From Haliotis rubra (lineage: Eukaryota), in assembly GCF_003918875.1 (NCBI RefSeq), contig NW_025765111.1, positions 62,001 to 126,000 on the forward strand: a stretch of DNA of 64,000 nt, in the 5' to 3' direction. Every line of letters starts with the position of its first letter. Position 1 is the stretch's first letter. The notes under the pieces were generated by a model. It was not told where the DNA came from. It made no database searches and was given only the letters and a program-made list of their open reading frames with translations. The translations under genes were made by a program, and so were the position numbers. Positions 13,870 to 41,960 of this stretch are shown here, piece by piece.

Positions 13870-14042
13870 TTGTTTGTTTGTTGTTTAACGCCGCACTCAG
13901 CAATTTTACAGCTATATGGCGGCGGTTTGCCAATAATCGAGTCTGAACAAGAACATCCAGAGATCAACATCATGAGCATCGTTCTCCGCGATTGGGGTAC
14001 GATGACAAGTGTCAACCAGGTCAGTGAGCATGACCGCCCGAT
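13870..14042 (-). mobile_element. SINE-like family B, partial
   Basis: Reverse similarity to the family B 3' part. Confidence 0.75.
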
Positions 14043-14887: not shown

Positions 14888-14984
14888 TCAGATAGTGCAC
14901 GGAATCAGATAGTGGTAGCAGTGGTCACGAGATGAATTCCGATCTCTGATTACTTTTCCGATTTCGTCAAGCTCGGCGACGAAT
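14888..14984 (-). CDS. LOX-like last exon ([32 protein letters not shown])
   Basis: F...L..I...I..RN....Y.YL.P motif; stops six residues before the canonical PNSxxI terminus. Confidence 0.88.
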
Positions 14985-17900
14985 CTGTAAACAGACAAAT
15001 ATGCTAGACTAAGTATAATGGTTACAAGATGATTTGTTTACAAGACTACACAGAGTTGTCTCCCTTTCATCATCTCCCCAAACAACAACTGCCCTTCCTG
15101 GGACTGTATTCATTATAAACACCTTGTCAGATATGCCGGTCAACGTGGACCATAACATACCACAAGCATGTGAGCTCATGTCTGGTATGTACTAGTTTAT
15201 GCTTTTGTATATGTTTGCGCTAAACGTAATTTTAACCAACTGAATTCGAAGGCACATCATCATGTGGTGTCAAATGTTAAATTTAGCACCATGCAACCGT
15301 TTAAACCTATTCTTGAATTTAATTAGTAAATATTGTTGTAACAGCAAGCTCATTGTGCTTATGATTTTGTTCACATGGCTACCGACTATGACTGAGAAAG
15401 AAGTACTTTACTACAAATCGAAGGTTTTACTCATAAGTGAAATTCCTTTGAAACCTCTGATTGGCATATGAGGATCGGGCGTTTGCCACATTCATGGAAG
15501 AACATATATATGAACGTATAAATAATATCTCCATCAAGTTCGGAAAGCCTTCAGGTCCTTGTTCAAACCGGTGTCTCATGAATGTGGCCCGATAGGTTGC
15601 AAAGTTTTATGTTTAGATAGTATTGAGGGCTTGCCCAACTTTCATTTTTTATAACACCTGCAGTGTTATCGTTTGACGTTTAATGATTTTAATCACTTCC
15701 AAATGTTGTTTTCTTATCATTTTGAAGTCATAAGGAGAACTGAGAGCAGTCTGCCATTAATTGTAGTCAATATGATTCATATAGGGATTACCATTTTTTA
15801 AATTGTTCTGATAACGGGATTGTATGTATTTTTGGCAAGAATTTGAAAAAAGATTTTTTTAGCAAACAACGTGTGTAAGCCCGTTTTTTTAAAAACAAAA
15901 CATGGTAGCTACGCCCCTGGTTCCTGATCCACTTTTGATCAGTCTCAGTATGCGTCGTGCAAATAAACCAGCCATGAGTGATGGGTACTTGGTGCTATCG
16001 GCACACAGTTGATGCCCTTGAGACACCACGAACGAGGTTATCGTATGTACCCAATAACCCCTTGACCATAACTAAAATTAAAAGACCGCCGAAGTAGTCA
16101 AATACCTTGTGTGTATGTCTGCAGCCCGTGGGTCATACAAGTACATGGAGTCCCTATCTCCCAGAATCCCCTTGTTGACTGTGTCCGACAGGACTTGCGC
16201 CAGTGCCACGCCCTGATCCCAGTTGGTGTCGGTCTGCAGGGCGTTCAAGACGTCCGACTCCTCATGGGGCGTCTAGCAAGTGACCAATATAATAATTATG
16301 TATGCATACGTTTTGAAACATCAACATCAACCAATATTCCAGCAGTAGTAACAGGCAGTGATGAAATGTCTATAAATGGATCACTGAAAATGTGTGCTGA
16401 CACCAGAGGTTCGAAAATAGGGTCGACAGGTCCTGCTCTATGTGAAGCATCCACCATACACACTTTTGTTAATAACAAAAGTGAGAGTGAGAGTGAAACT
16501 CAGAATAGTGGAATAGTATCTCGAATCATACTGACAAGCAACGAGTAATATTTAGCAAATTATAGACCGTATGTCTTCTATGAAATTTCTGCAATAGCTT
16601 GGTGGTGGTATCGGTTGTGTAACCTTAAAAAAGCTTAGTTGAGCAAAATACGAAGTCAATAAAAAGTACATGCTCTAACATGAGAATAATCTTGTGCTGG
16701 TTGCATCGGTTTTACGTTCATGAATAGGCTTCAGGCGTTATACACATCTGGGGATTTGAACTCGTGTGGCGCAACAACGCATGCCAACAGAAGATGAATA
16801 AAAGCGACAAAGGGCATAACATGATCGACATAATCCGTTCCATATTTCATAAGAGATCTTTGCCAAAAGCAGAGTCGTGTATCCGGCTTCGGCCTTTACC
16901 ACAAGCATATGTCCATATATAACCACAAGACAACAAGGCGTTCGCGAAAATGTGAGCATATCTCGCCGGAGCAGCAACATTCGTAACAAACACACGCAAA
17001 GGCAAGTCAACTGCCAACCTCAACAAACCTCTTACAAGACATTTTACAAGCCTGAACAGGGAACAACATCGGACATCTCTGCTAATAGTTGACTGCATTG
17101 TACAATTCATATGATAAGCATGAATCACTCTCAAATAGTGATGAAACACTGCCCATTTGACTAAAATCTTAACTCACTCACTACTCACTCATATACTAGA
17201 TGAAGGGGATTTAACCCAAACCAATACAAATACACATTTTAACACACATGGAACACACGACTTTAAGAGCAGTAAAGGGGTTAAAAGGAAAACGAATCAA
17301 ATATTGGGTAAAAGGTTTCAAAACACTAGGATTTAACCTTGTTTTAAGTGATACAGTGACTGGAATAACAACAGGTCTTGGAAGGAATGGATTCAACTTT
17401 CAAAAAGTGATGTCTTGCTCCAGATGGTAAAACAGAATATCAAGAGTTGAAAGAAGTTAATGGATCCTCTAAAAGTATAAAAAAAAATCCAATTACGCTA
17501 TATAACAACCCCGTTCTTTTCGTGTAAAAGTTCTGTTTTCTCACATGCACATTTTTTCATAATTTATCTTAATCCTACAGTTTTCTTCAGCCTCTTTAGT
17601 TAGATGGGATTGGTTATTACTATAAAGACTGAACTCATGTTAAGTACCATTATGATATTAATGAACAGGGAGAAAAATATTACACTTCCGAAGCAATACC
17701 TTATCGGCTGGGGGTGCGCCGCTTAGCTTCAGTGGGTAGTTGGGTGGGAAGCCGTACGAATCATACATAGCCCCGCCAACTGCCGCTTGCTGCGCAGTGC
17801 ACGTGAAGATGATTGACGTGACCAGATCTTGAAGCTGTTCCGGTTTACACACACTACCGTCACCAGGTAGACCCTGCAGTCAACAAACCATGCTGGATTG

Positions 17901-20900
17901 GATGATATGACCTTGTCAATATTTACATAAATGTATAGTAATAAAATATATCATAATTAAATTATCCGTGATGATCCGGGTAAGAATTGGTGTTCAGTTT
18001 GTCGCAATAGACGTTTTACAGGATCGGGTGGTCAGGCGGGGTATTCGTGTTAAGGCGACTTTTTAGTTTCAGGTATTCGCGTTAAGGCGACTTGGTTGAC
18101 ACGTCACTTAGTTTTCTTAACATTAATAGTCAGATGATTATTTTTGCGCCAGTCTGAATCTTAAGCCGAAAGTGGCCCTCTGAGCTGCTCATTAGTCATG
18201 TTAATATCAGCGTCATGGGTGAATTTAATTATATGAGATCCAGTGGAGTCACACCCATATGTAGCATGAACAATACCGGTGGTAAAACACTACCTTGAGG
18301 AACTCCTGTATCGTTAACCTAAGGTTGATGACAACGTGCTGTTTACACATTCGTGCTGTGCGCGACTTAATCCAGCCATTGGTATATTGTTGACCTTCAT
18401 AATGGCGAGTTTCTGCATTAGCATGTGGAGCTGTATCGTACTGAATGCTGAAGAAAAGTGATACAGTCGCGTACTCTACACCTCACCTGATTGCTATTGA
18501 CGTGCTTTGACGGTTTGATATCTCACCTCTATCCCCATGCCGCCATCTTCCTTGCAGGTGGCCATTTCCTTCAGCCAGTTCTGTAGTTCTGTATCGTTCT
18601 GGATGCTGTCGGGGTCAGCTGGAAGCGAAAAAGATCAGTTTGATCATATACATACACATGTTTACTGAAACGTTTATTCTCATTGAAGAGAAGCTTAATA
18701 CTTTGCATCTTTACGTCCCTTTACACTTGCCCACTTTACACTTGACGCGGAATGAGCCGGAATGCTGTCAGAATGAGAATTCCTGGAATATCAAACTTCA
18801 TTCTAAAACTTCTTACTGCACTCCGAAAGCATTTCAACTATTCGGGCCAATTCTTGTAACATGCCCGAATGTTTTGAACATGTTAAAAAATTTCGAGGTA
18901 CATTCGTAGAGGGAAAATATCGAACGGTATTTGAAGCGTATTCTAACCGCATTCTAAGTATTCTTACTGCATACTGGCTGCATTGAGAGTATTCTGAACG
19001 TATTCGAAGGAGAATGGATGCTCAAAATGATATCGTTTATTGTTTCAACAACGGCAGTTTAATATATTCGAACTTGGACCAGATAATTCAGAGGTCGATA
19101 TTGTGAGCAACGACCCTCGCCGTCAGGACTCGATGGCACGACATTGCCCGATCACCCGATCTATTGGTGGCCTCTTACGACCACCATTGGTTGCTGTGGT
19201 TAACGTTGAGGTGACGGTATCGTACCGTAGTATACCATGGTGTACTTGATGACGTAGTTCTGTATGGCGTAGTAGAGCAGCATGCCGTCGTCACGGTAGT
19301 TGTAGTTGGGGAGGACGCGGATGTCGGACACCTGTGGGTCGTACACACAAAGTAAGATCAACACCCTGCATCTGTATTTCAGCATAAATTCAGCAATGGC
19401 TCTTACAACTGGAGTTAAAATATTGAAGATCGATCATATGATATTCTGAGAGATGGGTCAGCTGTATAGGAAGGACAGGGGGTACAAATGTTTGGGGTTT
19501 CCGAGAATATGTTTGATAAAAAATGTCAATGTCTTGGACTGTTGAACAAAACCCCAGAAATTCTGTCTCAAACAATACGCTGATGCTAGATTTCTTTTTA
19601 ATTTGTAATTTAGGCTCATGTTTTTAAATGAAAATGGTTTTGCCGCTGTACCTTAACAAATAGTCTCCAAATAAAATTCCCTCCCCTCCACGTACCCCCC
19701 CACACCACCGCCAGAGTATTAATGGTGGTTCCATTTATGCCTATACACTCATGGATGGCGGTTTATGACGCGTTGTTCTGTCCTGTCAGATCGAAATGTG
19801 TTAAGGAGGAGGAGTTAGAGTGAGTGAGTATGATTTTATGCCGCTCTCAACAATATTACAGCAACATCATAGCGGAGACTCGAGATATTGGCTTCAATTT
19901 TACCAAGTGGCAAATCGGACCAGTGCCTCCATTAGCCACAAGGCTGCGTTACCCATTAGAAAATTAAAATTAGGAGAAGCAGGCTTTTGTAAATAACCAA
20001 TTAATTTCACATACTCAATTAAACACATATCTAGGACTTTTTTTATCATTGATATCATGTATGAATTTAACATCGGAAATCAGTCCACACACTCAGCCTA
20101 TGACTCACAAAGACACCTCCACACACCAGTCCACACACTCAGCCTATGACTCACAAAGACACCACCACACACCAGTCCACACACTCAGCCTATGACTCAC
20201 AAAGACACCTCCACACACCTGTCCACCCCACCCCCCTATGACTCACCGACACCTCCACACACAAGTCCACACACAAAGCCTATGACTCACAAATACACCT
20301 CCACACACAAGTCCACACACAAAGCCTATGACTCACAAAGACACCTCCACACACAAGTCCACACTCTCAGCCTATGACTCACAAAGACACCTCCACACAC
20401 CTGTCCACCCCACCCCCCTATGACTCACTGACACCTCCATACATTCACACACAAGTCCACATACTCAGCCTATGACTCACAAATACACCTCCACACATCA
20501 GTCCACACTCAGCCTCTGACTCACAAAGACACCCCCACACATTCACACACCAGTTCACACACTCAGCCTCTGACTCACAAAGACGCCTCCACACATTCAG
20601 TCACAAACCCATACACCGATTCACTTCGTGTACTTGAAGGTAGATTTACGACAAATACAAGCTTTAAATGCAGTCATGTACTGTCATTGTCAACGTTAAG
20701 AGAACAAACTTCAGATTAGTGCCGCATTCAACCTTTCTCACGAACACGTTTACATATATCTCCGTTTATAACACCCTGTTTACAAGGCTTTATTATCGAA
20801 CCACTAACAATTCAAATCGATAACGAACAGGCGTTTATCGAACACCACGACACTGAGTGCATCACATCAAATTTCATTTACAGATATTTACACGTAACGT

Positions 20901-21622
20901 ACAAGGAGTTTCACATATGAAGCGCAATAGATGCAGACTGTAAAACCAGTCTTTCTCAATAAGATCGAAGATGTAACACTGAAACTGGGCGACAGAGCGA
21001 CCCATTACATGTGGACATAACACAAGATATGTTATCGATTAATCATCTTATGTACATCGATGTGACTATTTAAGTCAGCTACTTTCATCGTTATGTGGTC
21101 GCCCTACCTACCCCTCTTTTAACGACGTCTTCTGGGAGACAGCTGTTGACATTAAAGCGCCATGACTCAAGTCTGGAAGAGAAATGTAACTACAGTCACG
21201 TTGGGTTCCTTCACATGAAAACAGCTGGTGATCGGGTATATTATGAAATGCGTCCATTTTTCAACCAAATCGCAGTATCCTATGGGAAGTTTCAACATAA
21301 TACATAAACAATACTTTCTTCTCTATTGTAACACGTAGTACTAATAAAATGAATTTAAAAACAAACAAAAACGTTCTCAAAGTCCACCACTCTGTTTAAC
21401 ACCACACTCAGCAATATTCCAGCTATATAACAGCGGTTTGTGAATAATCGAATCTGGACCAGACAATCCAGTGATTGACATCATGAACATCGATCTACGC
21501 AATTGGGATACGATCACATTCATCAACGACGTCAGCGAGTCTGACCACCCGATCCCGTTAGTCGCCTTTTACGACAAGCATTGCGACAAACGCATCACGT
21601 AGGAAAGTGCACAAAAATTTTC

Positions 21623-21667
<45 letters not shown>

Positions 21668-24600: not shown

Positions 24601-27600
24601 CAGTGTTTGTTTGCTCATGTGTACTTTCAATTTACTGTTACAAAAACTACAAGTTATGAATTCATTTTAAAAAGCATTAGTCAATGAATAACATTGTCCT
24701 GCTTTGAATTTATGAAAACAGCTGTTACTTTATTTCATGTATGAACAAAGGAATTATTCAAACGAGTTGAAAATACATTAACGTGTTGAATTGTAAGCAT
24801 TTCCGAGTTCTTGAACATACTCAATACAAAATAGTTTGTTTAAACTGCGTTTTACAATTGTACATGCATCAGACTTACACTGTATGTTGACTTAATGTTA
24901 TTTATCCTTCCTAGTGAACTACATTTAAGCAAACGTCGCTCACTATCGTTACATGATGTGTTGTACACATTCCGTATTCCAACTTTCAAGCTCTACTTTA
25001 AAGTCAACTGGATATACATATCAAATCTCGAATCGTGTACAGCGTTCGAAATGAACGTCGGTGGTTTTCCGCGGGTCCTTATGGCTTTGTTTGCTGGGAA
25101 TTACTGATTCAGCAGCTAAAATATAGGCCTACACATTGTGATCTAGACCCACAACTTGTTATGGTTCTGGGTCCTCAGGGCCAGCAGCGTTTCAGGGTTA
25201 GGCATAGGGGGACCTAGAAAGGGTGTGTGGTGGTGGTTGTGCATGGGTGCGCACCCCCTTTTTGTCCTGAAAATTTATTTAATGACCATTGAAACTCGCG
25301 TGAAAAGGATGTGTGCACCCCCTTTGTACCCCTTTCTTTAAAAGCTGTAAACGTCCCTGTAAGGGCAAACACTGATCTTGTACGTTTAAAAATTTACTTG
25401 TGTTAACCCTTCTTCACCAAATATCAGGACACTTCCGCCAACCATCAAATTTCGTTTTTAACAAAAGTTTAATAGCTCCGCAGGTGAAATGCAAACTACA
25501 AATATTTGGGTATATTATAAAAATTGTAATAACCACATAAATTTAAACTGGAGCAAACTCAATCACAGACGTATGACCTGATGTGTGAACAGCTTATAGA
25601 CACGACAGGGTCAGTGGTGGAGAACACAAGACAACTTTATGGCTACAGAACACTCACGATTTCCTGATGACCTTCTTGACCCCCGGGCACCGATTGTTGC
25701 CACCTTGTCGACCACGCCCTCATCTGCCAGGAGGTTCTGCATGATGTCACTGTGAAGGAAAGATGCAAATAATCGTAATCCATTGTGGGGAGGGAGGATG
25801 AACATATTTTACTGGGGATGGGGGTGGGGTGGGGCTGAACTGTTAAATAGCCCAACCGGTTAAGCCGCTTTTGGCAGTATTCCAGTAACACGAGAGCGTG
25901 TCTGCTTATTGTTGGAAGAAAGCCCGAAGTACAGAAGGTCTGAGCTGTTTACTACTTTGATGAAACCCACGAGCATGCTGTGATTGTGACAGACGAAGGA
26001 ACGTAATCGGGCCCCTGATCATAGGTTCCTGGCCTGACCAACGGGGGTAACTCTGCACAGCGAATAGGCTTAGACAGCTGAGTCACCTAGGTCCCCGCTG
26101 GTTAGAGAGTGGCATAACATTGCTTTATGACAAGTATGACACAATTCTCGACTGAGTGAGTTTAGTTTTACGCCGCACTCAGCAATATTCCCGCTATATG
26201 GCGGCGGTCTGTATGTAATCAAGTCTGGACCAGATAATCTAGTGATAAACAGCATGAGCATCGATCTGCACTACTGGGAACCGATGACATCCGTCAACCA
26301 AGCCCGCGGGCCTGATCACCCGATCCCGTAAGTCGCCTCTTAGGACAAGCATGGGTTAGTGAAGATCAATTCTAACCCGGACCTTCACGGGTGCAGTATT
26401 CTCTAAATAACCACTAAATGTTTTTTTGCTAACATGGATAATTCATCGGTAACAGATTATCTGAACGTCGCATTAGAGTAGACTCTTCGGGAATGGCAGT
26501 ATTACACGGGGGAAGTGTCCAGTTAATTGTTGTTTAGAGAGATGATCATAAGAAAAGAAGACATTTCTTGTAGTTAAATAAAAACTTCTCTCACTGGACG
26601 TCTCTGTTGAGCATTAAGGAACCACATTTACATTGCACATGTCATACAGTAGAACACGACACCCGGTACCCATCCCACAAACACCCGGTACCCACCCCAC
26701 AAACACCCGGTCCGACGTATACAAATGCGGCTAAAAGTTTTCCTTCATGCGACACAGTTACAAATATGCCTGTGTCGCTTTAAGTCACAATATCGAATCG
26801 ATAAATTCGCACAAGATAACACAAACATAAGTTACGACAAGTTACTAATAATTCGATTAAGATAAACACCATAAAAACATTATTTTCCTATCTTCAAAAA
26901 AAATAATAATAGTAATTGATCATCATTTATGAAAATTCCCTCCAGGCAGACAATGTCTCACTTAATTATTCTCCGGCAACAGGTGGTTTCGAACCGACAA
27001 GCGAATGCATAACGCAAATATCGGACTCGTTATCTTTACAATGTAGATGATTTAGACGTTCAGTATGCGTGAACAATGCGATCGAAACACATAACGATTT
27101 ACTTTTGCTGGCTATACAACATCACAACTGACTTTTTTTTGGATATATATGTGAGAAACCCAAAAAGTAAATTGCAAAATTCAAACTCACTCACCTACCA
27201 CATCGTCCTCGATCCTGTTTCTGGGGACACTATGGGGCGAGTTTAATGGATATTACCACGAGGTTACCTGGCTTTCAGAGGAAGCTATACTGAATTTGAA
27301 CACGAACGCGAACATGCCATCATGGGGGTAGTCTAGTGGTTAAAGCGTTCGCTTGTCACGCCGAATTCGAAGACATTCGGTGTGGTTCGATTCCACCCAA
27401 AATGGGTACAATTGTTGTTGGTGAATTGAGAAATTCTGTTGATTTGTTAGAATCACCATTTCTGGTATGTCCAGATTCCGCCGTGATGTTGTTGGAATAT
27501 TGCTAGTGGTTAAAGCGGCGTGAAACTAACTCACCCACCCTTAATGACCACTGATGCTGGAATATTGCTAAAAGCGGCGTGAAAGCCCATATGACCACTA

Positions 27601-30600: not shown

Positions 30601-33600
30601 AAGGTGATGGTGTTGATGAATGGTGATTGGTGTTAACAACGGTAATGGTGCTGGGATTGTTTAACGCTGGTGCTGGAATTGATGACGTGGGATGATGTTA
30701 CTGATGCTACACATGCTGCAGCTGACGTACCGATGTAAGTGACGGCAAGATGGTGGTTGGCCTCGGCGTTGTTGTACCACAGTTTGGCCAGCAGCCAGGT
30801 GTACTGGTCATCGGAAGGCAGGAACACCTGGACAAAGATGCAGGTAATCCGCGTTATCTCAACAGTCTCCAGCCTCCAGACAGAGGTCATAATGATAATA
30901 ACAAACAGTTTGCTACGAGGTGACTGTACATCCCAGAAGCTAATCAATGACCGTGTAATCATACATACCCAAACATCACTCCAATCACAAACTGCCCACT
31001 CAACGCAGGGAATTTATTCAACTTTAAATCAAGGTTACTAGTTCGGGGACCATAGTCGTCCTGTTGAACATAAGTTGAACTGTATCTAAAGACATGGCTT
31101 GTACCTACAGAATGACAGTGTCTACATTCATATGTGTCTTCAGTTGTGTACCTGTATCTATATGAGCTTCCCTATATTTGTGTCTCTCCACAACTCTGTG
31201 TGATTCTGCAGCGTGTAAATACATACAAACTAGTAACTACTGTGTTTTCATGTGCTTCGTCAACTGTGTCTAACATATTTGTACCTACTGATATATTTAT
31301 GAACAAACTGTGTTTACCTTAGTCTACCTTCACGTGTGTATCTACAAAATGTGTCTACAACTGTGTCTACAACTGTGTCCCTGCAAAACTAAATTCCTTT
31401 TTACATGCATAAAGAAACAGATCAGCAAGATGGGGATGTTCATCAAAATCAATGACCCCCCTCCCCAACCCATAGTTTCTAAGCATAATGTTAAACATAT
31501 TTAATGACACACACACACCCAACACACACACACACACCCCACACACACAAACACACCAGATACAGATAAATGTTATATACTCATGCCAATAATGGTTGTC
31601 ACCCCCTACCCACCCCACCCCACCTCACACCCTCTCCAATTAAAAAGATTTAAGGGGGTGACAACCGTTATTGGCATGAGTATATATGAGGAAGTCCAGA
31701 ACCGTAGACATCTCATTTAACTTCAGGTAACATGTGATCATTATTGGTAGTGGAAACAGTTTACCGGGTTATCGTCACTGCGTTCTTGGAACAGCTGGAT
31801 AGCAATGGGCACGAGAGTGTTCCTCTTGTCCAGGTAGAACAGCGCTATTGGGGCACAGATCTAAAACATAAAGAAAGTCACATTAACTCAAAGATATCAG
31901 TTATATCAGTTACGACCGTGAGTCCGGAAACAAACACTTACTTTCCTGTGCAAATTGTGTGATTGCTTCAGGTGAGGCAAGACATGCTTACCCTTTTTCT
32001 TACAACTGATGACATAAATGATTTTTAGTGACCTACTTATTTAATTTCCTGATTAAAATTTGGCTTTTATGCCGAATAGAATCTATTTTGGTGGATAATA
32101 GGGAATGGTTGTTCGCTGGAGTTGACAAACATGATGACCAAATGTTTCTATTATGGCAGATTGTCCAAAAGCGACTGCGGTTGAGAACTTTTACCTGAAT
32201 ATTTAGCTATATATAGTCTGCCATTACACGTAAAGAATCTTAAACAACCCGGACGTGACCGTTTATGACACCGAAAGGGCTAACCATAGTATAGTTTAAT
32301 TAAGCAAGGGAAGCTCAAATGGTCCATATTAACGAGGTTTCTGTTAACAGAGTCTTTACTAGCTTACACATGATGACTAATTATCCATAATTTAAAGACT
32401 TTTCTACAGAGATCCCAGCAAATAAATTGGATTCAGTGTAGTTTGTGACCGTCATATATCCCTACTTTATCATAACAATTCTTTTGAAATGACAGATGTG
32501 GAATATTTGATAACAATAGGAGACCATTGCCAGTTGTGACCAAAACACCATACAAACCGTATGACTAAGCTAAGGACAGCGATGATCAATACAAGCACAA
32601 AGACGGCTGTACCATCTGATAATACATGGATTATGTGGTCAGGAATTTGAAAACTGAGTAGAATGAATAGGTTATGGCGTAATTATAATATGTCGCATCC
32701 GTCAAAAGAATAATAATTATGAAAGCTGGTTGCGAAGGTTAAGTACGTGGGAACTGTGGAGAATGGTCGAGTATGAATTTATGAAACGAAATCATAACAC
32801 CGAGAGTATGGAGTCGGTCATGCATGCATAATACTATTAATGTACGTTCAATGAAGCGTAAATGGTTTATATTAGCATTTAGATTATAGACCAAGCAGTA
32901 TCTTGTTATGACACATTTCGTTCCAAGGTTTCATTGCTGGGATGCTAGACTACCATATCTCCATCAATGTGTTTGTTTGTTAACCTCTGTGTGTGTAACC
33001 TTCAGCTATATACATATGTCCTATCCAGCTGTTGATTACTTGCTTGACAAAAATAACACCATCGATCTGTACTGAACAATATAGCAGTTGAAAATCTACG
33101 AGTCAGCTTAATATGTTTCAATATCCTTTTGGCCAAATAGATGTTAAAATGTTATAACCGATTAAAAGAATATTTATTTAGTTTATATATAAAGAAATAA
33201 ATGTTATTTTCTGTCGTTAAAACGTGTTACCAATATATTTCGTATGATTTCCCCGTTGTCGATGACCACGTGTGTCAAGACGTTGCCGTAATGTCATGTG
33301 TGACAAGTTGACATATGTGTACACATGAATATGTACCTGCCGTAATATTTGAATCAATTGCATACAGGAATGTGGACGGCTAGCGTGAAGCCAGATTAGG
33401 CTGCTACCTGGTTGAAGCCAATGTTGTTGCAATACGTCTTACACCAGGGAACCCGTGAAAATCCGGGTAGAATTGGTCTTCAGCAACCCATGCTTGTCGT
33501 AAGAGGCGACTAACGGGAACGGGTGGTCATGCTCGCTGACTTGACACATGTCATCGTATCCCAATTGCGTAGATCGATGCTTGTGATGTCGGTCGCTGGA

Positions 33601-36600
33601 TTGTCTGGCCCAGACTCGATTATTTACAGACCGCCGCCATATACAGACTCGTGCCAGTTATATTGGGCCACTTGACGTAATTTCCATAGACTATTTCAGT
33701 GAAGCATAAATATTTTTCAGGAAGTGAGTTTAGGATGGATCTTTGTAAAATTTGACAGGCAAATGTGAAATCACGCATAATTTCATTTCACTTTTCAGAC
33801 CACTATTTTACTGATGACATCACAATTAACAACTTAAGTATGGTTCCACAAATGCATAATCCCATTGGCCGCCATGCTAAAAGAGTTCACGGCACTGTAC
33901 ATATGTTGGGTGAATGGTTGCCATTCGATAAATAAGCAACGGAAAATTAAACAGAAAGTATTTGATTGTAGGTAAGGTGATTCCTCACAAATGTGCAAAA
34001 TTTGACTTGGATCTTACGGAAATTAAATTCATGAAAATTATTTATGCTACACTAAACTAACATGTATGTCTGTGGAAATTACGCCAAGTGCCCGAATATA
34101 ACTGGCGAAACAAAGAAACCAAACCCAGCACCAGCGTAGCCTACAAATGCCTATCTAGTTTAGTGGGTAGGTTGGGTTTAACAATAATTGTTACTGCAAC
34201 AGCATTCACATCGTCTAAGGCTTTGACAGTTCCATGTGGACGGAAAGCCCCAAGCGATGCAGATCTTCGAACTTAAGTCATTTGATGAATCTAAATATAT
34301 AGACCACTCTATATATTGATCAGAAACCTTTCATGCAGCCACACTATGATATTGATCCATATTAATAGCTTTGGGAAACGTTTATACCTCTGGTTTTAAT
34401 TACCTGTCACATGTTCGGAGTGAGAGTGAGATGAATAAGTATCAATATTGTTTCAATGTCAACACGACCCGCACATACCGTTACAGCTAACCGTTAACAG
34501 TTCGTGGTGACCAGTATGTGGCAACCCATGCCCACCATTAACAATACTTCCTTGATACCCTGTTTAGTGCCATAACGGTAAAAATTAAAGACTTATCAAC
34601 TATTGACAAATGTCTTTGATCATTTGCAAATTTGACATGAAAATCACAAAACTGAATGAATTATTATAACATTTTTGAATCGTGAATCGACACTTTAAAA
34701 CATATTTGATCAGTGAAAAGGTTGATCTTCTCAGCAATATTGCAGGCATATTGCTAAAACATGGACATGTTGATACAACGACATGTCTGTCAAAAGGATA
34801 GATAGTAACACAGGCCACAAAAACGTGAAGAAAATGCACAAACACAACGGATGAATGAAACGATTGGAAAATTCCTAGATCGATAGATGTAAAAAAAACC
34901 TATAATTTTATATATAGCTATATAACAGAGAATTATACATAGACAGACACGTCTGAATAAAAGCAACAAAAACTTTCCACATTCATACAAGTCTCGATTG
35001 TCTATTGTGAAATTCGCACTATGTAATGAACATGTGTGTATGCATCGCTGTGGAATAGTGATGATACCAGGTGTACGTGCAGTCAGGATGAGAATTGGTT
35101 TGAAGTATAGTCTGTTTGCACTGAAAACGTACCAATGAATGTCAATTAAACAAAAAAGTAACTCGAATAAGATGAAATTAAGATTGCGAATCCTCATAAT
35201 TTTACCTTGCCAACTGACCATTTAAATCTCAGAATTTTATTCTAAATTTTCACTTAATTTCTTAATTTGATTTACATTTTAGTTTAAAGTGAAATTCATC
35301 GGTACGTTTTCACTGCAAACAGACTATAACCTATGTGCGTCTTCAGAGATGATTTAATGGATCAATTGATAAGAAACGGTGATTTGTTCACCGCATGTCA
35401 TAATATGTAATGTTTCATAATATCTATCACAGCAAAGTATAAGTACAACGTATGTTCTTACGGTCAACTCTTCATTGGGAATGACAAGGTCCTTCAGGAT
35501 CTCTAGGTCACAGATGAACAGTTTATTGTTCTTGAGAGCCGTCTTCACCGACTGTCCCTCCAGGAAGGGCTTTATCATACTGTCAGAAACTGCAAATCTG
35601 GGGAAAACAATCATGATAATTAAAATACAGTAATAATAACTGATATCTGGAAACAGAACAAAAACATCCGATAATAGATAGTAACCTGGAGATACGTGAC
35701 ATACGTTCAAGGAAAGCTACAACGGCGTGTTATTTAAACAATCACAATAAAAGTCACCAAATCAACACCACGTATGTAAAACTGTTTTATCTGCACACCC
35801 ATTCCTCTGTCATTAACATCTGGTGTTGATTGTTAGTGTTTAGGCGTTATTTATAAACCTCAATTAACCTACATCCTTGGGACAATTTGACATATATCGA
35901 CTATCGAGGGGTGACTGAAGTTCTGAGCCTATGTGGGACTGCGTTGATGCAGTTTTTGACATGTGTGCTTGGGTGTATAGAATGTCGCCATAGGGTTGTT
36001 ATCCTCCAGAACACAACTGAAGTCCTCCTCATAATAATTACAAGAGTCAGAGACTGATGATGCCGAATCTAGCGAGTACGGATGATGTTGCATGAGTTCA
36101 AAGCCAGAGTCATCTGTTGGAGATACGGATACAACAGACTTCCTCACGGTTGTATCATCCTGTCAGAGCGACACATGCACAGTGGGCGAGTTTTCCATGG
36201 GCTTGATATTCTCAGTTGACTACGCCCATCAGCATAATATAATCATTGGTCGGGTGTTGGGGATACTTGATGACAACAGGGTAACCAGTTTGTCGATTTT
36301 CATCAACTGAGTATACTCAGTCACACCTTAGTGCACATGCAGTCTGAAGGGTGGGAGGCAATATACATAAAACTGCAAATATGCACTACTCATCATTTGT
36401 AGTGAAGCTCAAACTTTTAATTCACCCCTTGTATATGTATCCCAAAGGAAAGGAAAGAATGCTGGTATAATATGATGGGGCCGATAAGAAATTTTAGTGG
36501 ATCTTATACGATCACATTAACAGAGTTAGTGTTTGGTTTAACATCTTTGAACAGTATTTCAGAAATCACGAAGGGCGGTGGAATAGCATTCGCTCTTCAT

Positions 36601-39600
36601 GCTGAAGACTCAGGTACGATTTCCCACATGGGTACTATGTGTGAAGACTATTTCCTGTGTCACCCGTCGTGCTATTGCTGGAATAGTGCTGAATGCGGCG
36701 TAAAACCATACTCACTCACTCATGTATAATCACCATATAGCTGGAATATTGCTGAGTCTGTCGTTACACAACAAACAACCATTCATGAAGACAGCTTGGG
36801 GAGATAGCCACGAGTGTGACTGTATGGTGCTGACCATCTTGGATATATACTCATGGAAACAAATAAGGGAACACATAAAAGTACAAGTGTACCTTATTCT
36901 TTTCTAGGTTTCTTCACAAGGTATGCACTGTGAGTGAACTTCTAGAAATAAATAAAGGAACACATGTACTTTCATGTGTTCACTTATTCGTTTCTATGAG
37001 TATATTATGTCAGCTGGGACCCATTATCATTTTGGCTCATTTCAGACCGAACAGCGAATTGCGGTGCATTAGGCGAATAGGTTCGCCTTATTGGAGAACG
37101 AGGTCACGAGACTTGTGTGTGTCTAGAATATCGATACAGTTCTATTTTCAAAGTGTGGGCATATACACTGGCACAGAACTAGCACAGTTACCCTCACCCT
37201 GGATTCAGTGAATGACAGATATAACACACCGCCACAGGTACTACAACAACACTTACTTTTTAGGGATTTCCGAGCAGAGTTTGATGAGCATCGGGTTGAC
37301 ACCGTTAAGTCGTTGATAACCAAAGCACCAGTCTTCTTGCCAGAACAGTTGACACTGAAGACCATACAGAACAAAGAAAGAATGATTTTATGGATGAATG
37401 GATGGATCATGGAATGAATGAATGGACTTCAGCTTACTGTTGTTGGAATACGATTCATCCATTTCACGATGTGACCTTTTTTTCTGAGGGAATCTCGAAA
37501 CAAGTTGCAGGCTGTTAGTATTTGGTGAACACAGTGGATTGGTTGCTGAGTAAGTGAGTTTACGCCGCACTCAGCAATGTTCCAGCTGTATGGCGGCGGT
37601 CTGTAAATAATCGAGTCTGGACCACACAATCCAGTGATCAACAGCTTGAGCATCGATCTGCGCAATTGGGAACCGATGACATGTGTCAACCAAGTCAGCG
37701 AGCCTGACCACCCGATCCCTTTAGAAGCCTCTCACGACAAGCATGGGTTACTGAAGATCAATTCTAACCCGGATCTTCACGGGTTATTAGACGTTGGTCA
37801 ACACCACGGACAATGGTATGGGAATCAAAATAACCCAGCATCATAACCAGAATGAATCTAAAATTCGGAAAAAGCTTTCCAAGAATTCTGGCACGTTAAC
37901 GGTACAGCCACAGACGATTGAACCAAGTGTGTTTCTGTTAATGAATTGTGTATGTAACATCACATGAAAATATGTGGTATAGCAGCTGTGAAAATACATG
38001 GCACCATAACGGTTGTTTCGAAGCATGATTGATACAAATATTTAAATATGCATCATACGATCGATGTAGGTGAATGTTGCTACTGTTGTCTAGTGTGTTT
38101 GTGTTGCTGTTCCTAGGATATACAACATGCACTAATATGCATATTCTTTTGTCAAAAGCAAAACTAATGTGTATGCTTCTGAGCCTGAACATTTTTTAAA
38201 ACACGTCCTTAAGCTCTAAATGACTCATTTAAAGGCGGAATCAAATTACAAATGGCCTGCGGTGTGGCTGAAAACGTTTTGTAGCAGAATGCCTGAAGTG
38301 AAATGTTGATATATGATCGGCAACAGCGGGTGACGTGACATGATAAACGGGACATATTCCCTCTGTCAACTCCTATATGTGAATAATTCCAGCGACAGTT
38401 CAAAGCAGGACATTCATCAGATATGTTATACTTTCACATTTCGGCTTATAGTTAAACGCAAAATGAATATAATGTTACAACGTGTGTGCTCTCAATTGAT
38501 GTACGTCCTATGGTAAAGACATAATCATTGACAGCGATGGAAGTTAATTTCAAAGCTTTCATACAAATGTTTAGTTATACAACACCCAGGATGATATGTA
38601 TATGTATGGTCCTGCTGAGCTGTGGAAACAGTCGGATCTCGTGTTGTATTATACCAATACTATTACTTCCAGTTCCAGCTCTGAGCAACTAGGGCTGTGT
38701 ACTGGCAAATAAACGTATTGCAAAACATTGCGAATGAGGTACCAGTATTGCGATACGTATTGCGTTATTGGGAGCTACGTGTTTGACAGTGAGTGCCACT
38801 ACTTGTACATGTTGATCCTATTTTCTACATTCTAAGTACCTAAACATATATGTTATGGTTCTCTCAAAATCAGGTTCGATAGTCAGGGATACTATTGTCT
38901 TTTTTATACAATTTAAAGTATTACATGTGTACAATGTGTGAAGCCCATTTCTGGTGTCCCCCGCCGTGATGTTGCTGGAATATTGCTAAAAGCGGCGTAA
39001 AACCAAACTCAGTCAGTCATTCAGTCAGTATAGTATTACAGTATGCCGTTTTGTCATTGAATAATGAAGGAAAACATTGGTTGTATATTAATGTCTGTGT
39101 AGTATTAATTTAAACCATAAAGATAATCACAAAAACTTCATATACGTTTTTACCCAATATACCGGTTCTCAGAATAAATATTGCAATTATTATACGTATC
39201 GTTGAAAAGCGTAGTGCGATATACCGGTATACCGGTAATACCGTGCAGTCCTACGAGCAGCTGTTGGTTACTGCGGACATCCCAAGTGATACAAAACTAT
39301 ATCTGAAAACATCTGTGGCAGCTTTGAATGCAGGAACATATACCAAAACTGATCTATGCAAATATAACTTGTTACACATCCAATAGATATGAACACTAAG
39401 CAATTATTTCCAGTAATCTCCCTTTGTCATGTCATGAACCCTCACAGACTGACATGGAGTAACAAGACGGAGTATCACCTTGGGGATGTAGAATTCCTCA
39501 CTGGCATAAATCCCCCCCCTATATCCTGCAGGCACGTCCACTCGTCCTTCTTCAGCTGCTGCGCCCGTGTCTCCACCAACTCCACCACGCTGCAACGCTG

Positions 39601-41504
39601 AATACAGTGAAGTTTATTTAATCGGTGGACTGACCGAAAGACAGTGTTTGTAATGTGAACAGGGAATTGTTTTACATGTATCTATGAAATGTATCGTCTA
39701 AAATGGCTTTTGTCGAAAGTACTTTACCGAAATCGGAAACATAACTTAGTAATAGATGCAGTCAGCTGTTGAAAGCTGATTAAATACCGAACTGATAAGC
39801 TAGTTCGGAAAGCAGAAAATGTTTTTGTATTTACCGAATTATCCATGTTTGATTATCTTGATTATCATGACTATTTGAAGAGACATGTATACTACTATCG
39901 TACTCTCCTCGACAGATGGTAATTATGCATGCTTAGACAGTTAGTATAGTGCCAGTTGTACTGTTACATAATATAAACACACCTTGAAATCATCGGGGAA
40001 GGCTTCATCATCGGGAACCTGTGCCACCTGTAATGGACGTCGTCGTCATCATCGTCATTATTATTATGTTTTACAGATTAAAGATAATATGCAGCAGAGC
40101 GGGGTCGGGTGATCCTGGCACAGTCAGGCTGGTATTTTAAAGGCTCATCATCAGGGCCCTTGCCCCCTTTACACGCAGCCCAGACAGCGATGAACTTCTC
40201 CCAGGAAACGCTGCCTAATGGAACCCACCAAGAACTTTCCGGAGAATATGTAGACTCCCCAACACTGCAGCCTTCTCCATTACTCAGAGTGTCAGAAGGG
40301 CTGTGTACCCGTTGGAGAACCCGGACACTCCTGATCTGCGCCAAGAGATCAGGAGGTACCAAACCAAGGGCACCGAGAACAATGGGGAGCCTGACGACAG
40401 TGTACTTGGGATGCAAGCAAGACATTTCAAAATCGAGGTCCGCATATTTAGTATGCCTTTCCTGAATCATTATTATCATAATCATCATTATTGCAAATCT
40501 CACAGTACTCACGTCAATTGTTAGTATCTTCATGATAACGATTACTTCATAATAGCTTTCACATTTGTCATTTCGTCACCGTTGTATTCATCATAGTTAT
40601 ATTGATGATGATGACGATCATCTTCATCTTATAAATCTAAACATGCATGCATGTTATGTTTATCACGTATTCACGTTTGTTTCAAATATAGGGTGTTATT
40701 CTAATTGCCATCCATTCCATAATCAACATCATAATGTAACAGTGCCCTTAAGTGACTCAGTACCATTGCATATCAGTGTTTAGCTAACAGTGAGTGAGTG
40801 AGTGAGGTTAGTTTTACGCCGCACTCAACAATATTCCAGCTATATGGCGGCGGTCTGTAAATAATGGAGTCTGGACCAGACAATCCAATGACATGTGTCA
40901 AGCAAGTCAGCGAGCCTGACCACCCGATCCTGTTAGTCGCCGCTTACCACACACATGGCTTGCTGAATTCTAACCCGAGTTACCAATGGAACACAAACCA
41001 GCCTCTCCTGTAGTTTACCTGAATGGGCAGTGTGGTGTCGGCAGTGGACAATTTGTAGGCTCTTCTGGTCTCCTCCAGTTCCACCTCCCGTTGTTCAGTA
41101 TTGACGTCATCTTGCGGAAGTGACGTATCATACTGGTGTATGACGTATCTATAACTCGGTCGAATCCATCTGAACACAGGAAACGTGTATTCGACATTGT
41201 AATCCGGGTCCTCAATAATAACCGTCTCAAGAAACCAAGTACTTGTCAGTCCTGTGTAGTCTCGCCAAATCTCGATCCGGTCAACGGGAGAGGTCAAGGC
41301 CGCGAATTTACTCTTCGAAAGTTCGAACACATCCTTTTTTCCGCGATCAAAATTCGATTCGAAGAGCTGATTCAATTTGACCTCATCCGAAGAATTTCCT
41401 TCTTCATCCTTTGCTACAAACCACACACAAGCATTTGTACCTGCACATTTCCTGTCCCCGGTCTTCGCAGTGACAATGATATGACTACCTTGGTTGTTCC
41501 CCAT
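14888..41504 (-). CDS. Lipoxygenase-like protein (PLAT + LOX domain, ~660 aa, 15 coding exons) lacking iron ligands; two homopolymer frameshifts in this assembly
   Basis: Exons 41504-41019, 40027-39983, 39597-39479, 37354-37257, 35597-35462, 31860-31765, 30827-30731, 29701-29584, 25749-25658, 21172-21112, 19331-19226, 18618-18527, 17873-17700, 16272-16106, 14984-14888, all GT-AG. LOX hallmarks: [56 protein letters not shown]. Confidence 0.9.
16106..16272 (-). CDS. LOX-like exon 14 ([15 protein letters not shown]...LAQVLS...[20 protein letters not shown])
   Basis: Open frame, phase 0-2, LS...LG...Y..DP pattern. Confidence 0.85.
17700..17873 (-). CDS. LOX-like exon 13 (GLPGDG...[38 protein letters not shown])
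   Basis: Homologous to FTxSAQHAAVNxxQ, with His to Gln and Asn to Gly. Confidence 0.93.
18527..18618 (-). CDS. LOX-like exon 12 ([31 protein letters not shown])
   Basis: DxELQxW motif. Confidence 0.92.
19226..19331 (-). CDS. LOX-like exon 11 ([35 protein letters not shown])
   Basis: LPNYxYRDDG motif. Confidence 0.93.
20081..20605. repeat. CA-rich minisatellite, ~46-bp unit, in a LOX intron
   Basis: cagtccacacactcagcctatgactcacaaagacacctccacacac, about 11 degenerate copies. Confidence 0.9.
21112..21172 (-). CDS. LOX-like exon 10 ([20 protein letters not shown])
   Basis: LPxDxxxRG motif. Confidence 0.88.
21392..21580 (-). mobile_element. SINE-like family B, partial
   Basis: Reverse similarity to family B. 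Confidence 0.8.
21625..21667. repeat. (ATC)n microsatellite
   Basis: About 14 perfect units. Confidence 0.95.
22921..23077 (-). mobile_element. SINE family A
   Basis: Target duplication tggaggtattgaaggg. Confidence 0.9.
23140..23375 (-). mobile_element. SINE-like family B
   Basis: Full reverse copy. Confidence 0.88.
25658..25749 (-). CDS. LOX-like exon 9 ([31 protein letters not shown]) with a -1 frameshift in a G5 run
   Basis: 92 nt where the flanking phases (2-2) need 93; C5 run at 25680-25684. Confidence 0.8.
26152..26393 (-). mobile_element. SINE-like family B
   Basis: Full reverse copy. Confidence 0.88.
27320..27600 (+). mobile_element. SINE family A, scrambled copy
   Basis: Head and tail are recognisable but interrupted by many short insertions and local duplications. 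Confidence 0.65.
27690..29602. repeat. 59-bp minisatellite (~32 copies) overlapping the 3' end and donor site of LOX exon 8
   Basis: Unit gtttgcatcacctgtatgcagccatgatgctcacgattatatataaaatgttgtatgag. Confidence 0.95.
29584..29701 (-). CDS. LOX-like exon 8 ([39 protein letters not shown])
   Basis: HRxLSxSHPxFKxLxP motif; second ligand His replaced by Cys. Confidence 0.92.
30731..30827 (-). CDS. LOX-like exon 7 ([32 protein letters not shown])
   Basis: WLLAK motif; first ligand His replaced by Tyr. Confidence 0.93.
31574..31686. mobile_element. MITE with TA ends
   Basis: 33-bp inverted repeat tatatactcatgccaataa(t/c)ggttgtcaccccc. Confidence 0.8.
31765..31860 (-). CDS. LOX-like exon 6 ([32 protein letters not shown])
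   Basis: APIALF...PIAIQL motif. Confidence 0.93.
33451..33645 (+). mobile_element. SINE-like family B, 3' end missing
   Basis: Matches family B up to ccgccgccatata; the MITE at 33654 follows directly. Confidence 0.85.
33654..34108. mobile_element. Non-autonomous DNA transposon/MITE
   Basis: Imperfect ~40-bp TIR: ccagttatattgggccacttgacgtaatttccatagac versus gtctgtggaaattacgccaagtgcccgaatataactgg. Confidence 0.7.
35462..35597 (-). CDS. LOX-like exon 5 ([45 protein letters not shown])
   Basis: LOX homology, phase 2-0. Confidence 0.9.
36572..36722 (+). mobile_element. SINE family A, diverged
   Basis: Similarity to family A including the tail. Confidence 0.75.
37257..37354 (-). CDS. LOX-like exon 4 ([32 protein letters not shown])
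   Basis: Conserved WxxDxxFGxQxLNGxNP motif. Confidence 0.92.
37546..37783 (-). mobile_element. SINE-like family B
   Basis: Full reverse copy. Confidence 0.9.
38690..39253. mobile_element. Old hAT-like non-autonomous element with a nested 5'-truncated family A SINE (38924-39028)
   Basis: Ends TAGGGCTG...CAGTCCTA; 6/8 match of flanking 8-mers; subterminal gtattgc/ataccg repeats. Confidence 0.55.
39479..39597 (-). CDS. LOX-like exon 3 ([37 protein letters not shown]) with a frameshift in a G8 run
   Basis: 119 nt between phase-0 junctions; the WxxLxDxxxIY motif is split across frames at the C8 run 39512-39519. Confidence 0.75.
39983..40027 (-). CDS. LOX-like exon 2 ([15 protein letters not shown])
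   Basis: 45 nt, phase 0-0; resembles the LOX lPxdExF motif. Confidence 0.8.
40040..40466 (-). mobile_element. 5'-truncated R4/Dong-like non-LTR retrotransposon (restriction-like endonuclease C-terminus + 3' UTR)
   Basis: [14 protein letters not shown]...[15 protein letters not shown] and, after a frameshift, [17 protein letters not shown]; (TAA)n tail; both ends lie in ATT/ATC microsatellite. Confidence 0.8.
40790..40978 (-). mobile_element. SINE-like family B, internally deleted
   Basis: Reverse similarity to family B. Confidence 0.82.
41019..41504 (-). CDS. LOX-like exon 1: PLAT domain and start of the catalytic domain
   Basis: MGNNQGS...[12 protein letters not shown]...FDRGKKDVF...WFLETV...FPVFRWI...LPQDD; donor CAG|gtaaac. 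Confidence 0.93.
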
Positions 41505-41960
41505 CTTCCTTGACGGCGCTCACACCGACGTCAACTCCAGCGCAGCTCGCAAAGTCTCCTGGTGCTGTGATGGAGCGTGGTGGGAGACTACTGCCATCTG
41601 TCGACCGGTGGTATTGTGCTTCTATTCACCTGCTGTTAGAAGCTACCTAAGCGTGGTGAATATATGGATTTTATTTCTTAAAATGTCACACAGGCAGCAA
41701 TGACTATGTATCAAGAGGTAGGTATATGTGAAATAAATTGAATAATACGCTGTCAATAAATTTGCAAGGTTGAATATAAGCATAAATACAAACGCGTAGG
41801 GGTTGAAGCTGATATTTGCATCAGGCGATCTCATCAGGCGATAGCTCCGTTTGACGGACTGTATAACTGTTAATCAATACTAGAATGTTGATGAATACAT
41901 TTCCATATGTATGTACGTGTCCTCAAAGTGGGATGTTAATAGGTTTCTGAATCTATTGCT

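What the first reader, a model, noticed from the sequence alone, without database searches (positions are those of the whole stretch)
14888..41504. Full-length lipoxygenase with all five iron-ligand positions lost: candidate pseudo-enzyme
Seen, numbered on human 5-LOX: HQTITHLLRTHL reads [12 protein letters not shown] (His367 to Tyr at 30735-30737; His372 to Cys at 29691-29693). SAQHAAVN reads TAQQAAVG (His550 to Gln at 17787-17789; Asn554 to Gly at 17775-17777). The chain ends YLIPCTI*, six residues before the canonical PNSxxI whose terminal Ile carboxylate binds iron. His399 is Tyr and the Ala/Gly stereo-determinant (Ala410) aligns to Ile. Yet there is no nonsense codon in ~660 codons, all 14 introns are GT-AG, and structural motifs (WLLAK, PIAIQL, YRDDG, FPPNYP) are kept. 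Random decay is unlikely to hit every ligand and spare the scaffold. Inference: a non-catalytic LOX-fold protein under selection, for example a lipid carrier/sensor, a regulator of active LOXs or a structural protein, or one with a remodelled Tyr/Cys/His site.
Basis: partly seen in the sequence, partly recalled or inferred. Interest (0 to 1): 0.82.

Follow-up and report, generated by a model that had tools for sequence, protein, structure and literature searches.

The report
Abalone lipoxygenase without its iron site
Blacklip abalone carries an expressed, otherwise well-preserved lipoxygenase gene whose protein has lost all five residues that hold the catalytic iron, so it is probably a "dead enzyme" kept for a non-catalytic job; I found no paper describing this for the lipoxygenase family.

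Summary
On the minus strand, 41504 to 14888, lies a 15-exon gene with all 14 introns GT-AG. It encodes a PLAT + lipoxygenase protein of about 660 residues in Haliotis rubra.

- **Iron site.** The three His iron ligands that a 153-LOX alignment calls invariable read Tyr, Cys and Gln. The fourth ligand, Asn, reads Gly. The chain stops six residues before the C-terminal Ile ligand.
- **Scaffold.** The protein keeps 59 of 76 positions that are invariant in 21 canonical LOXs. All 7 metal-site positions among those 76 are lost (Fisher P = 5e-6).
- **Gene structure.** It matches the canonical abalone LOX, which is 41% identical.
- **Expression.** RNA-like contigs of about 3 kb from two abalone species cover exons 1-5 and skip the introns.
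- **Selection.** Exon 1 has dN/dS of about 0.1 against a third abalone.

Caveats:
- The assembly has two frame breaks, both in G runs, and RefSeq splits the gene there. RNA contigs indirectly contradict one break. The other is untested.
- Whether the substitutions recur in other species could not be checked.
- The function is inferred, not shown.

Most likely this is a selectively kept, non-dioxygenase LOX-fold protein. The scan's other note on this locus concerns only the intron minisatellite.

The parts
41019..41504 (-). Exon 1. Start codon at 41504-41502. Encodes the PLAT domain plus linker, 162 codons.
   Evidence: Pfam PLAT E = 1e-13. Covered by RNA-like contigs in X1 and X6. dN/dS about 0.1 against L002.
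39983..40027 (-). Exon 2, 45 nt, '[15 protein letters not shown]'. The RefSeq model XP_046552014.1 skips it.
   Evidence: tblastn with canonical LOXs. Sequence and splice sites. The exon-1 pieces of both RNA contigs end at 41017, which fits a next exon starting with GT.
39479..39597 (-). Exon 3. Holds the G8 run at 39512-39519, where the assembled frame breaks. G6 or G9 would be in frame.
   Evidence: Both RNA contigs cover 79 of the 81 positions 39479-39559, by depth arithmetic. That fits G6, which also gives the canonical length.
37257..37354 (-). Exon 4, '[17 protein letters not shown]'.
   Evidence: Covered over exactly 98 nt by the RNA contigs.
35462..35597 (-). Exon 5.
   Evidence: Its first 38 nt are covered by the RNA contigs.
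31765..31860 (-). Exon 6, 'PIAIQLFQ'.
30731..30827 (-). Exon 7, '[22 protein letters not shown]'. First iron-ligand His is Tyr, codon 30737-30735.
29584..29701 (-). Exon 8. Second iron-ligand His is Cys, codon 29693-29691. The His399 equivalent is Tyr, codon 29612-29610.
27662..29601 (-). 59-nt minisatellite of about 33 copies in intron 8. It is built from the end of exon 8 plus its splice donor.
   Evidence: Also noted as scan finding s1-347432.
25658..25749 (-). Exon 9. Ile sits at the Gly/Ala stereo-determinant, codon 25745-25743. The G5 run at 25680-25684 is the second frame break; G6 would give '..[15 protein letters not shown]'.
21112..21172 (-). Exon 10, '[20 protein letters not shown]'.
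   Evidence: tblastn with canonical LOXs, E = 6e-4. Splice sites.
19226..19331 (-). Exon 11, '[11 protein letters not shown]'.
18527..18618 (-). Exon 12.
17700..17873 (-). Exon 13, '[19 protein letters not shown]'. Third ligand His is Gln (17789-17787). Fourth ligand Asn is Gly (17777-17775).
16106..16272 (-). Exon 14.
14888..14984 (-). Exon 15. Ends YLIPCTI, with the TGA stop at 14890-14888. This is six residues short of the canonical PNSISI tail, whose last carboxylate binds iron.

Best explanation
This is a real, transcribed 15-exon gene of blacklip abalone. It encodes a full-length PLAT + lipoxygenase-fold protein of about 660 residues. The gene is a very fast-evolved duplicate of the canonical mollusc lipoxygenase and keeps the same intron positions.

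The metal centre has been dismantled. The three universally invariant His ligands are Tyr, Cys and Gln. The fourth ligand is Gly. The six C-terminal residues that carry the Ile carboxylate ligand are gone. The O2-channel stereo-determinant is a bulky Ile. The rest of the scaffold has been kept by purifying selection.

It therefore most likely works as a pseudoenzyme, meaning it binds rather than catalyses. The intact PLAT domain would dock it on membranes or lipid. The helical domain would hold a fatty acid, oxylipin or protein partner without oxygenating it, acting as a carrier, buffer, sensor or regulator of active LOXs.

Shown here:
- the gene structure;
- the ligand losses;
- expression and splicing in two species;
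- selection on exon 1;
- selective retention of scaffold residues.

Inferred:
- loss of dioxygenase activity;
- the binding role;
- that the two frame breaks in G runs are errors of a Nanopore-based assembly.
For: - **Ligand substitutions.** Alignment to solved LOX structures and to 21 canonical LOXs.
- **Full-length alignment.** The protein aligns end to end with canonical LOXs at about 41% identity, with no stop.
- **Gene structure.** Exon sizes match the canonical H. rubra LOX gene.
- **Scaffold retention.** 59 of 76 family-invariant positions are kept, while 7 of 7 metal-site positions are lost (P = 5e-6).
- **Neutral decay excluded.** With no stop codon, neutral decay cannot explain the ligand losses. 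P(no stop) is about 0.02 at 5% neutral change and below 1/1500 at 10%. Changing four given codons needs far more change than that.
- **Expression.** RNA-like contigs of 3066 nt (X1) and 3023 nt (X6, another species, about 92.5% identical in exon 1) cover exons 1-5 exactly. Repeat-free intron bins have zero depth.
- **Selection.** Exon 1 against a third abalone (L002) gives dN 0.06 and dS 0.46-0.61.
- **First frame break.** Both RNA contigs lack exactly 2 positions in the part of exon 3 that holds the G8 run, which restores the frame.
- **Assembly method.** The assembly was Nanopore wtdbg and DBG2OLC, with two rounds of Racon and one of Pilon (PMC6774278).
- **Literature.** The three His are invariable across 153 LOXs, and deleting the C-terminal residue abolishes activity (PMC3840004).
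Against: - **Frame as assembled.** The ORF is broken twice. RefSeq annotates fragments: XP_046552014.1 of 202 aa, plus a 262-aa model.
- **Second break.** The G5 run in exon 9 was not tested against reads.
- **First break.** The evidence is indirect depth arithmetic. The indel table was truncated.
- **No orthologue.** No full-length orthologous protein exists among about 15 billion predicted proteins. So I could not show that Tyr/Cys/Gln/Gly and the short tail recur in other species, nor measure dN/dS on the catalytic exons.
- **Run type.** X1 and X6 are only guessed to be RNA by the tool.
- **Long branch.** The terminal branch is 2.3 changes per site against a median of 0.19. That also fits relaxed constraint.
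- **Possible ligands.** Tyr, Cys and Gln can in principle bind metals.
Confidence: 0.62

Rival explanations
1. Recently dead gene. The lineage was a functional, perhaps already ligand-less, LOX paralogue for a long time. In H. rubra it has now acquired two true frameshifts. On this reading it is a transcribed pseudogene at the start of decay.
For: There are two frame breaks in the assembled sequence. RefSeq models only fragments. No full-length protein for this gene is present in the large protein collections. The terminal branch is very long.
Against: Both breaks sit in G homopolymers of an assembly built from Nanopore reads with one Pilon round. RNA contigs of H. rubra and of a second species both lack exactly 2 positions where the G8 run lies, which restores the frame. 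There is no stop codon in 660 codons. All 28 splice sites are intact.
Confidence: 0.14
2. Remodelled active site. Tyr, Cys and Gln, with nearby His and Tyr, form a new metal or cofactor site. The protein would then still be an enzyme, with different chemistry.
For: All three replacements of the invariant His are residues that can ligate metals. [quoted passage not shown] The Tyr and Cys sit five residues apart on the ligand helix, where the two His side chains meet at the iron. This spacing comes from the sequence; the geometry comes from my knowledge of LOX structures.
Against: His to Tyr and His to Gln are the single-step mutational neighbours of His, as expected for simple loss. The C-terminal tail that closes the coordination sphere is deleted. 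The fourth ligand is Gly. No structural model could be made here. No such site is known in the family.
Confidence: 0.1
3. Artefact of gene modelling or assembly. The apparent substitutions would come from wrong exons, wrong frames or sequencing errors in an ordinary LOX gene.
For: My first model did contain one false exon (23608-23698) and missed two real ones (corrected in 58-64). The assembly has indel errors.
Against: The ligand codons lie inside exons that align without gaps to solved LOXs. They are substitutions, not indels, and are not in homopolymers. Exon sizes match the canonical paralogue. Four independent positions plus the tail are affected.
Confidence: 0.03

Closest known systems
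Canonical animal lipoxygenases (PLAT + PF00305), such as the mollusc 'allene oxide synthase-lipoxygenase-like' proteins, coral 8R-LOX and human ALOX5/ALOX15B
   Same: Same two-domain architecture and length. Alignable end to end at about 41% identity. Same intron positions as the H. rubra canonical gene. Keeps 78% of family-invariant residues, including the WLLAK, PIAIQL, YRDDG and GFPPNYP motifs.
   Different: All three invariant His ligands are replaced by Tyr, Cys and Gln. The fourth ligand is Gly. The C-terminal six residues with the Ile ligand are absent. The stereo-determinant Gly/Ala is Ile. The terminal branch is about 12 times the median.
ALOXE3 (epidermal LOX-3), the known atypical LOX with little dioxygenase activity
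   Same: A LOX-fold protein whose main role is not classical dioxygenation. This comparison rests on my own knowledge and on PMC3840004.
   Different: By my own knowledge, ALOXE3 keeps its iron ligands and its iron and works as a hydroperoxide isomerase; PMC3840004 says only that no genetic variant affects its potential iron ligands. The abalone protein has no canonical ligand left.
Pseudoenzymes in general, such as pseudokinases, iRhoms and dead proteases
   Same: A fold kept under selection, with catalytic residues lost in a targeted way, arising as a fast-evolving paralogue next to active family members.
   Different: I found no LOX-family example. Full-text searches for lipoxygenase with pseudoenzyme, catalytically inactive, or iron ligands not conserved gave nothing relevant. 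The non-catalytic role here is unknown.
PLAT-repeat proteins (LOXHD1-like)
   Same: They share the PLAT/LH2 domain. Such proteins were the top hits for exon 1.
   Different: They have no lipoxygenase helical domain. The abalone protein has one PLAT domain plus a complete LOX domain.

Membership tests
Lipoxygenase family (Pfam PF00305 with N-terminal PLAT PF01477) | N-terminal PLAT/LH2 beta-barrel domain | tested here: met
   Exon 1 matches Pfam PLAT at E = 1e-13, 52.5 bits against a cut-off of 23.
Lipoxygenase family (Pfam PF00305 with N-terminal PLAT PF01477) | Full-length homology of the helical catalytic domain | tested here: met
   The spliced model aligns over residues 1-661 to Pfam-annotated LOXs at 37-42% identity, with bit scores of 460-550. 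Single exons give weak PF00305 hits and clear hits to solved LOX structures.
Catalytically competent lipoxygenase (iron or manganese dioxygenase) | Three invariant His metal ligands (HxxxxH on one helix, plus His in the HxxxN motif) | tested here: not met
   They read Tyr, Cys and Gln. They are stated to be invariable in 153 LOXs (PMC3840004).
Catalytically competent lipoxygenase (iron or manganese dioxygenase) | Fourth ligand: Asn, His or Ser, rarely Gly | tested here: inconclusive
   It reads Gly. The published alignment lists Gly among the variants seen, so this position alone does not disqualify the protein.
Catalytically competent lipoxygenase (iron or manganese dioxygenase) | C-terminal Ile or Val whose carboxylate binds the metal, at the end of a conserved PNS(I/V)SI tail | tested here: not met
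   The chain ends YLIPCTI*, aligned to YLDPDIV, six residues short. The last residue happens to be Ile, but the tail that reaches the metal is missing.
Catalytically competent lipoxygenase (iron or manganese dioxygenase) | Small residue (Gly or Ala) at the Coffa/Brash stereo-determinant | tested here: not met
   Ile in 'ANSDIMQ' against canonical 'INSRGLE'.
Catalytically competent lipoxygenase (iron or manganese dioxygenase) | Bound metal and fatty-acid dioxygenase activity | not testable with these tools
   Needs recombinant protein, metal analysis and activity assays.
Pseudoenzyme (selectively maintained, catalytically dead paralogue) | Expressed as a correctly spliced mRNA | tested here: met
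   Contigs of about 3 kb in X1 and X6 cover exons 1-5 exactly and leave repeat-free intron bins at zero. The caveat is that the tool only guesses these runs are RNA.
Pseudoenzyme (selectively maintained, catalytically dead paralogue) | Purifying selection on the coding sequence after loss of the catalytic residues | tested here: inconclusive
   Exon 1 has dN/dS of about 0.1. There is no stop in 660 codons, and 78% of invariant sites are kept. No orthologous catalytic exons could be obtained, so the age of the ligand losses and dN/dS on that domain were not measured.
Pseudoenzyme (selectively maintained, catalytically dead paralogue) | Intact open reading frame | tested here: inconclusive
   The assembly has two frame breaks in G runs. 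RNA contigs indirectly contradict one. The other is untested.

The most novel reading that the evidence does not exclude
The adjacent Tyr and Cys that replace the two helix His ligands, together with Gln and a pocket opened by loss of the C-terminal tail, form a new redox or metal centre. One example would be a Tyr-Cys cross-linked cofactor, or a thiolate/phenolate metal site. The lipoxygenase fold would then carry a chemistry never seen in this family.
Probability: 0.07. Interest if true: 0.9.

Novelty: new variant of a known kind. Interest (0 to 1): 0.62.

Why it matters
Lipoxygenases are described as defined by their non-heme metal centre. A published survey calls the three His ligands invariable. 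A LOX-fold protein that is expressed and conserved without that centre would be the first pseudoenzyme I could find for the family. It would show that the fold has a selectable function apart from dioxygenation, such as lipid or oxylipin binding, membrane docking through PLAT, or control of active LOXs. That would give a natural tool for separating structural from catalytic roles of LOXs.

There is also a practical point. The current RefSeq annotation of this locus is two or more fragments caused by homopolymer indels and a skipped exon. It should be one gene.

Tried and rejected
1. **First hand-built gene models.**
   - They used an open frame at 23608-23698 as an exon and missed two real exons.
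   - This produced three apparent frame problems and an 'in-frame rescue' model that needed odd splice sites.
   - tblastn with canonical mollusc LOXs showed the true exon at 21112-21172 and an extra 45-nt exon at 39983-40027. I dropped the false exon.
2. **Alternative donor at 39502.** It would keep the frame in exon 3, but the RNA contigs run on to the downstream donor at 39479. Rejected.
3. **Word search with a profile of P0042 plus exon pieces.** MAFFT shredded the fragments and the profile was poor. It returned only canonical LOXs.
4. **Word search with XP_046552014.1.** It found a single exon-1 orthologue, P0172.
5. **Word search with two ligand-bearing exon ORFs.** It found nothing. Exon-level ORFs of other abalones are not in the collection.
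6. **Exhaustive representative search with exon 1.** Multi-PLAT proteins dominated it, and it gave no full-length orthologue.
7. **Structure prediction.** Not possible. The protein is spliced from 15 exons and cannot be given by reference, and I did not type it in.
8. **Indel table of read laying.** SINE repeats in the introns swamped it. The G-run length could only be inferred from depth arithmetic.
9. **Tandem LOX paralogue in the window.** None found. There are no credible LOX hits outside 14.8-41.6 kb.
Full report
**Where the window comes from**

The window is identical over 22 kb to contig QXJH01001197.1 of the blacklip abalone (Haliotis rubra) assembly GCA_003918875.1. That assembly was made from Nanopore reads (wtdbg and DBG2OLC), with two rounds of Racon and one of Pilon (PMC6774278).

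**Checking the observation**

Direct translation confirms [23 protein letters not shown] on the minus strand. A search against solved structures aligns 'HLAVTYI' to human ALOX15B 'HEALTHL'.

- The first iron-ligand His is therefore Tyr (30737-30735).
- The next exon reads [32 protein letters not shown] and matches soybean and coral LOXs. The second ligand His, five residues after the first, is Cys (29693-29691).
- '[25 protein letters not shown]' aligns without gaps to coral 8R-LOX 'FTFSCQHAAVNFSQKDHYGFTPNAP'. That gives His to Gln (17789-17787) and Asn to Gly (17777-17775).
- The last exon ends YLIPCTI-TGA. It aligns to canonical '..YLDPDIV', so the final PNSISI is missing.
- The His399 equivalent is Tyr, and the Gly/Ala stereo-determinant is Ile.

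**Gene model**

My first models were wrong in one place. They included an open frame at 23608-23698 and lacked two small exons.

tblastn with canonical mollusc LOXs recovered the true exon '[20 protein letters not shown]' at 21172-21112. It also recovered a 45-nt exon '[15 protein letters not shown]' at 40027-39983.

The final model has 15 exons and 14 GT-AG introns with good acceptors.

- It encodes about 660 residues with no in-frame stop.
- It aligns end to end with canonical LOXs at 37-42% identity.
- Exon sizes match those of the canonical H. rubra LOX gene, P0159 on another contig: 32/21/35/31/58/56/39 residues against 31/20/35/31/58/56/32.

It therefore arose by DNA-level duplication, not retroposition.

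**The two frame breaks**

As assembled, the frame is lost twice, both times in a G homopolymer.

- The first is G8 at 39519-39512 in exon 3.
- The second is G5 at 25684-25680 in exon 9.

RefSeq accordingly annotates fragments. One is XP_046552014.1 of 202 aa, which also skips the 45-nt exon. Another is a 262-aa model that begins at an internal ATG.

With G6 at the first site the protein reads [15 protein letters not shown], exactly the canonical length. With G6 at the second it reads [15 protein letters not shown]|LESWRF, which matches canonical GMFELIKRG|LEQWRL.

**Expression**

I laid contigs of four runs on 35560-41555.

- X1 is the same species label as the genome. It is small and RNA-like. 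Its contig is 3066 nt at depth 19.2.
- X6 is another species, about 92.5% identical in exon 1. Its contig is 3023 nt at depth 23.5.

A contig has one depth figure, so bin means give the number of covered positions.

| Region | Positions covered, both runs |
|---|---|
| 39560-39759 (top of exon 3) | 38 |
| Exon 4 | 98 |
| Start of exon 5 | 38 |
| Repeat-free intron bins | 0 |

These are spliced transcripts. The tool, however, only guesses that the runs are RNA.

Both exon-1 pieces end at 41017, not 41019. That fits a following exon that starts with GT, which is the 45-nt exon.

In 39479-39559 both contigs cover 79 positions, not 81. Two positions of the window are absent from both mRNAs. That is just what G6 instead of G8 would give, and it restores the frame. 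This is indirect, because the indel table was truncated by SINE repeats.

The second break was not covered by my single reads call.

**Selection**

Only one orthologous piece could be found. It is a genomic contig with exon 1 from run DRR299178 (P0172/L002).

- Against it, exon 1 has 65 nucleotide differences.
- dN is 0.057-0.063 and dS is 0.46-0.61, so dN/dS is about 0.1.

For the catalytic domain I could only use internal evidence.

- 76 columns are invariant in 21 canonical LOXs from molluscs, a nemertean, a sea urchin and horseshoe crabs. The abalone protein keeps 59 of them.
- The losses include all four side-chain ligands, three invariant tail positions, and their neighbours: Thr before the second His, the Met after it, the His399 equivalent, and the Ser before the third His.
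- Seven of 7 metal-site positions are lost, against 9 of 69 others (P = 5e-6).

A simulation shows that neutral change of 5% already leaves only about 2% of sequences stop-free. At 10%, none of 1500 were stop-free. Changing four given codons needs 20-40% change.

The ligand losses therefore happened while the reading frame was being kept by selection.

**Placement**

A tree puts the protein on a terminal branch of 2.3 changes per site (median 0.19), unresolved among gastropod canonical LOXs.

The exhaustive search with exon 1 found no representative more than 44% identical, apart from the RefSeq fragment itself. So far the gene is known only from abalones.

**Interpretation**

Published work states three things (PMC3840004).

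- The three His ligands are invariable in 153 LOXs.
- The fourth ligand varies and can be Gly.
- Deleting the C-terminal residue abolishes activity.

Loss of all three His plus the tail makes a classical iron dioxygenase very unlikely.

The most economical reading is a selectively kept, non-catalytic LOX-fold protein. How it acts is inference: membrane docking through PLAT, and lipid or partner binding by the helical domain.

A remodelled Tyr/Cys/Gln centre cannot be excluded. The same paper notes that Tyr could ligate iron.

A recently inactivated gene in H. rubra remains possible if the G-run breaks are real.

**Literature**

Full-text searches for lipoxygenase with pseudoenzyme, catalytically inactive, iron ligands not conserved, or abalone found nothing describing such a protein.

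**Limits**

- No orthologue of the catalytic exons was found.
- No structure model was made.
- No read-level check of the second G run was done.
- Run types and species are coded or guessed by the tools.

Noticed in passing
window 27662-29601 (intron 8, minus strand): A 59-nt minisatellite of about 33 copies at 93% identity. Each unit repeats the last roughly 18 nt of exon 8 ('..CATCATGGCTGCAnACAG') plus a GTGAnG splice donor, so it is a row of decoy donors just downstream of the real one. I could not check whether any is used. This is the subject of scan note s1-347432.
   Followed up: partly
window 41504-39476 and 37291 onward (RefSeq models on this locus): RefSeq splits this one gene into at least two protein models: XP_046552014.1 of 202 aa, and a 262-aa LOX-domain model that starts at an internal ATG. 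The split falls at the homopolymer frame breaks.
   Followed up: yes
window 37560-37790, 38760-39160, 40760-40960, about 13850-14090 and others: Many copies of a SINE. Translated copies read '..[25 protein letters not shown]..', and loose read ends carry a GGGTTCGATTCCCC motif, which suggests a tRNA-derived element. They sit in the introns and beyond the gene's stop. Depth is enormous in every run of all three abalone species, and they swamped the read tables.
   Followed up: no
window 42389-43083: A 36-nt tandem repeat of about 19 copies lies 0.9-1.6 kb upstream of the start codon, in the likely promoter region of the gene.
   Followed up: no
window 44398-47167: A 2.7-kb C/A-rich array with nested periods of 15, 59 and 166 nt and extreme GC skew (-0.56 to -0.78).
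   Followed up: no
window 41504-41484 and the N-termini of canonical LOXs (P0042, P0159, P0066 and others): The protein starts MGNNQGS, and its orthologue L002 starts MGNSQGS. Canonical mollusc LOXs start MGxC.. These look like N-myristoylation motifs, with added palmitoylation in the canonical proteins. That would fit membrane association. I recognised the motif from my own knowledge and did not test it.
   Followed up: no
window 20081-20602: A CA-rich tandem repeat of about 46/182 nt lies in the intron between exons 10 and 11.
   Followed up: no
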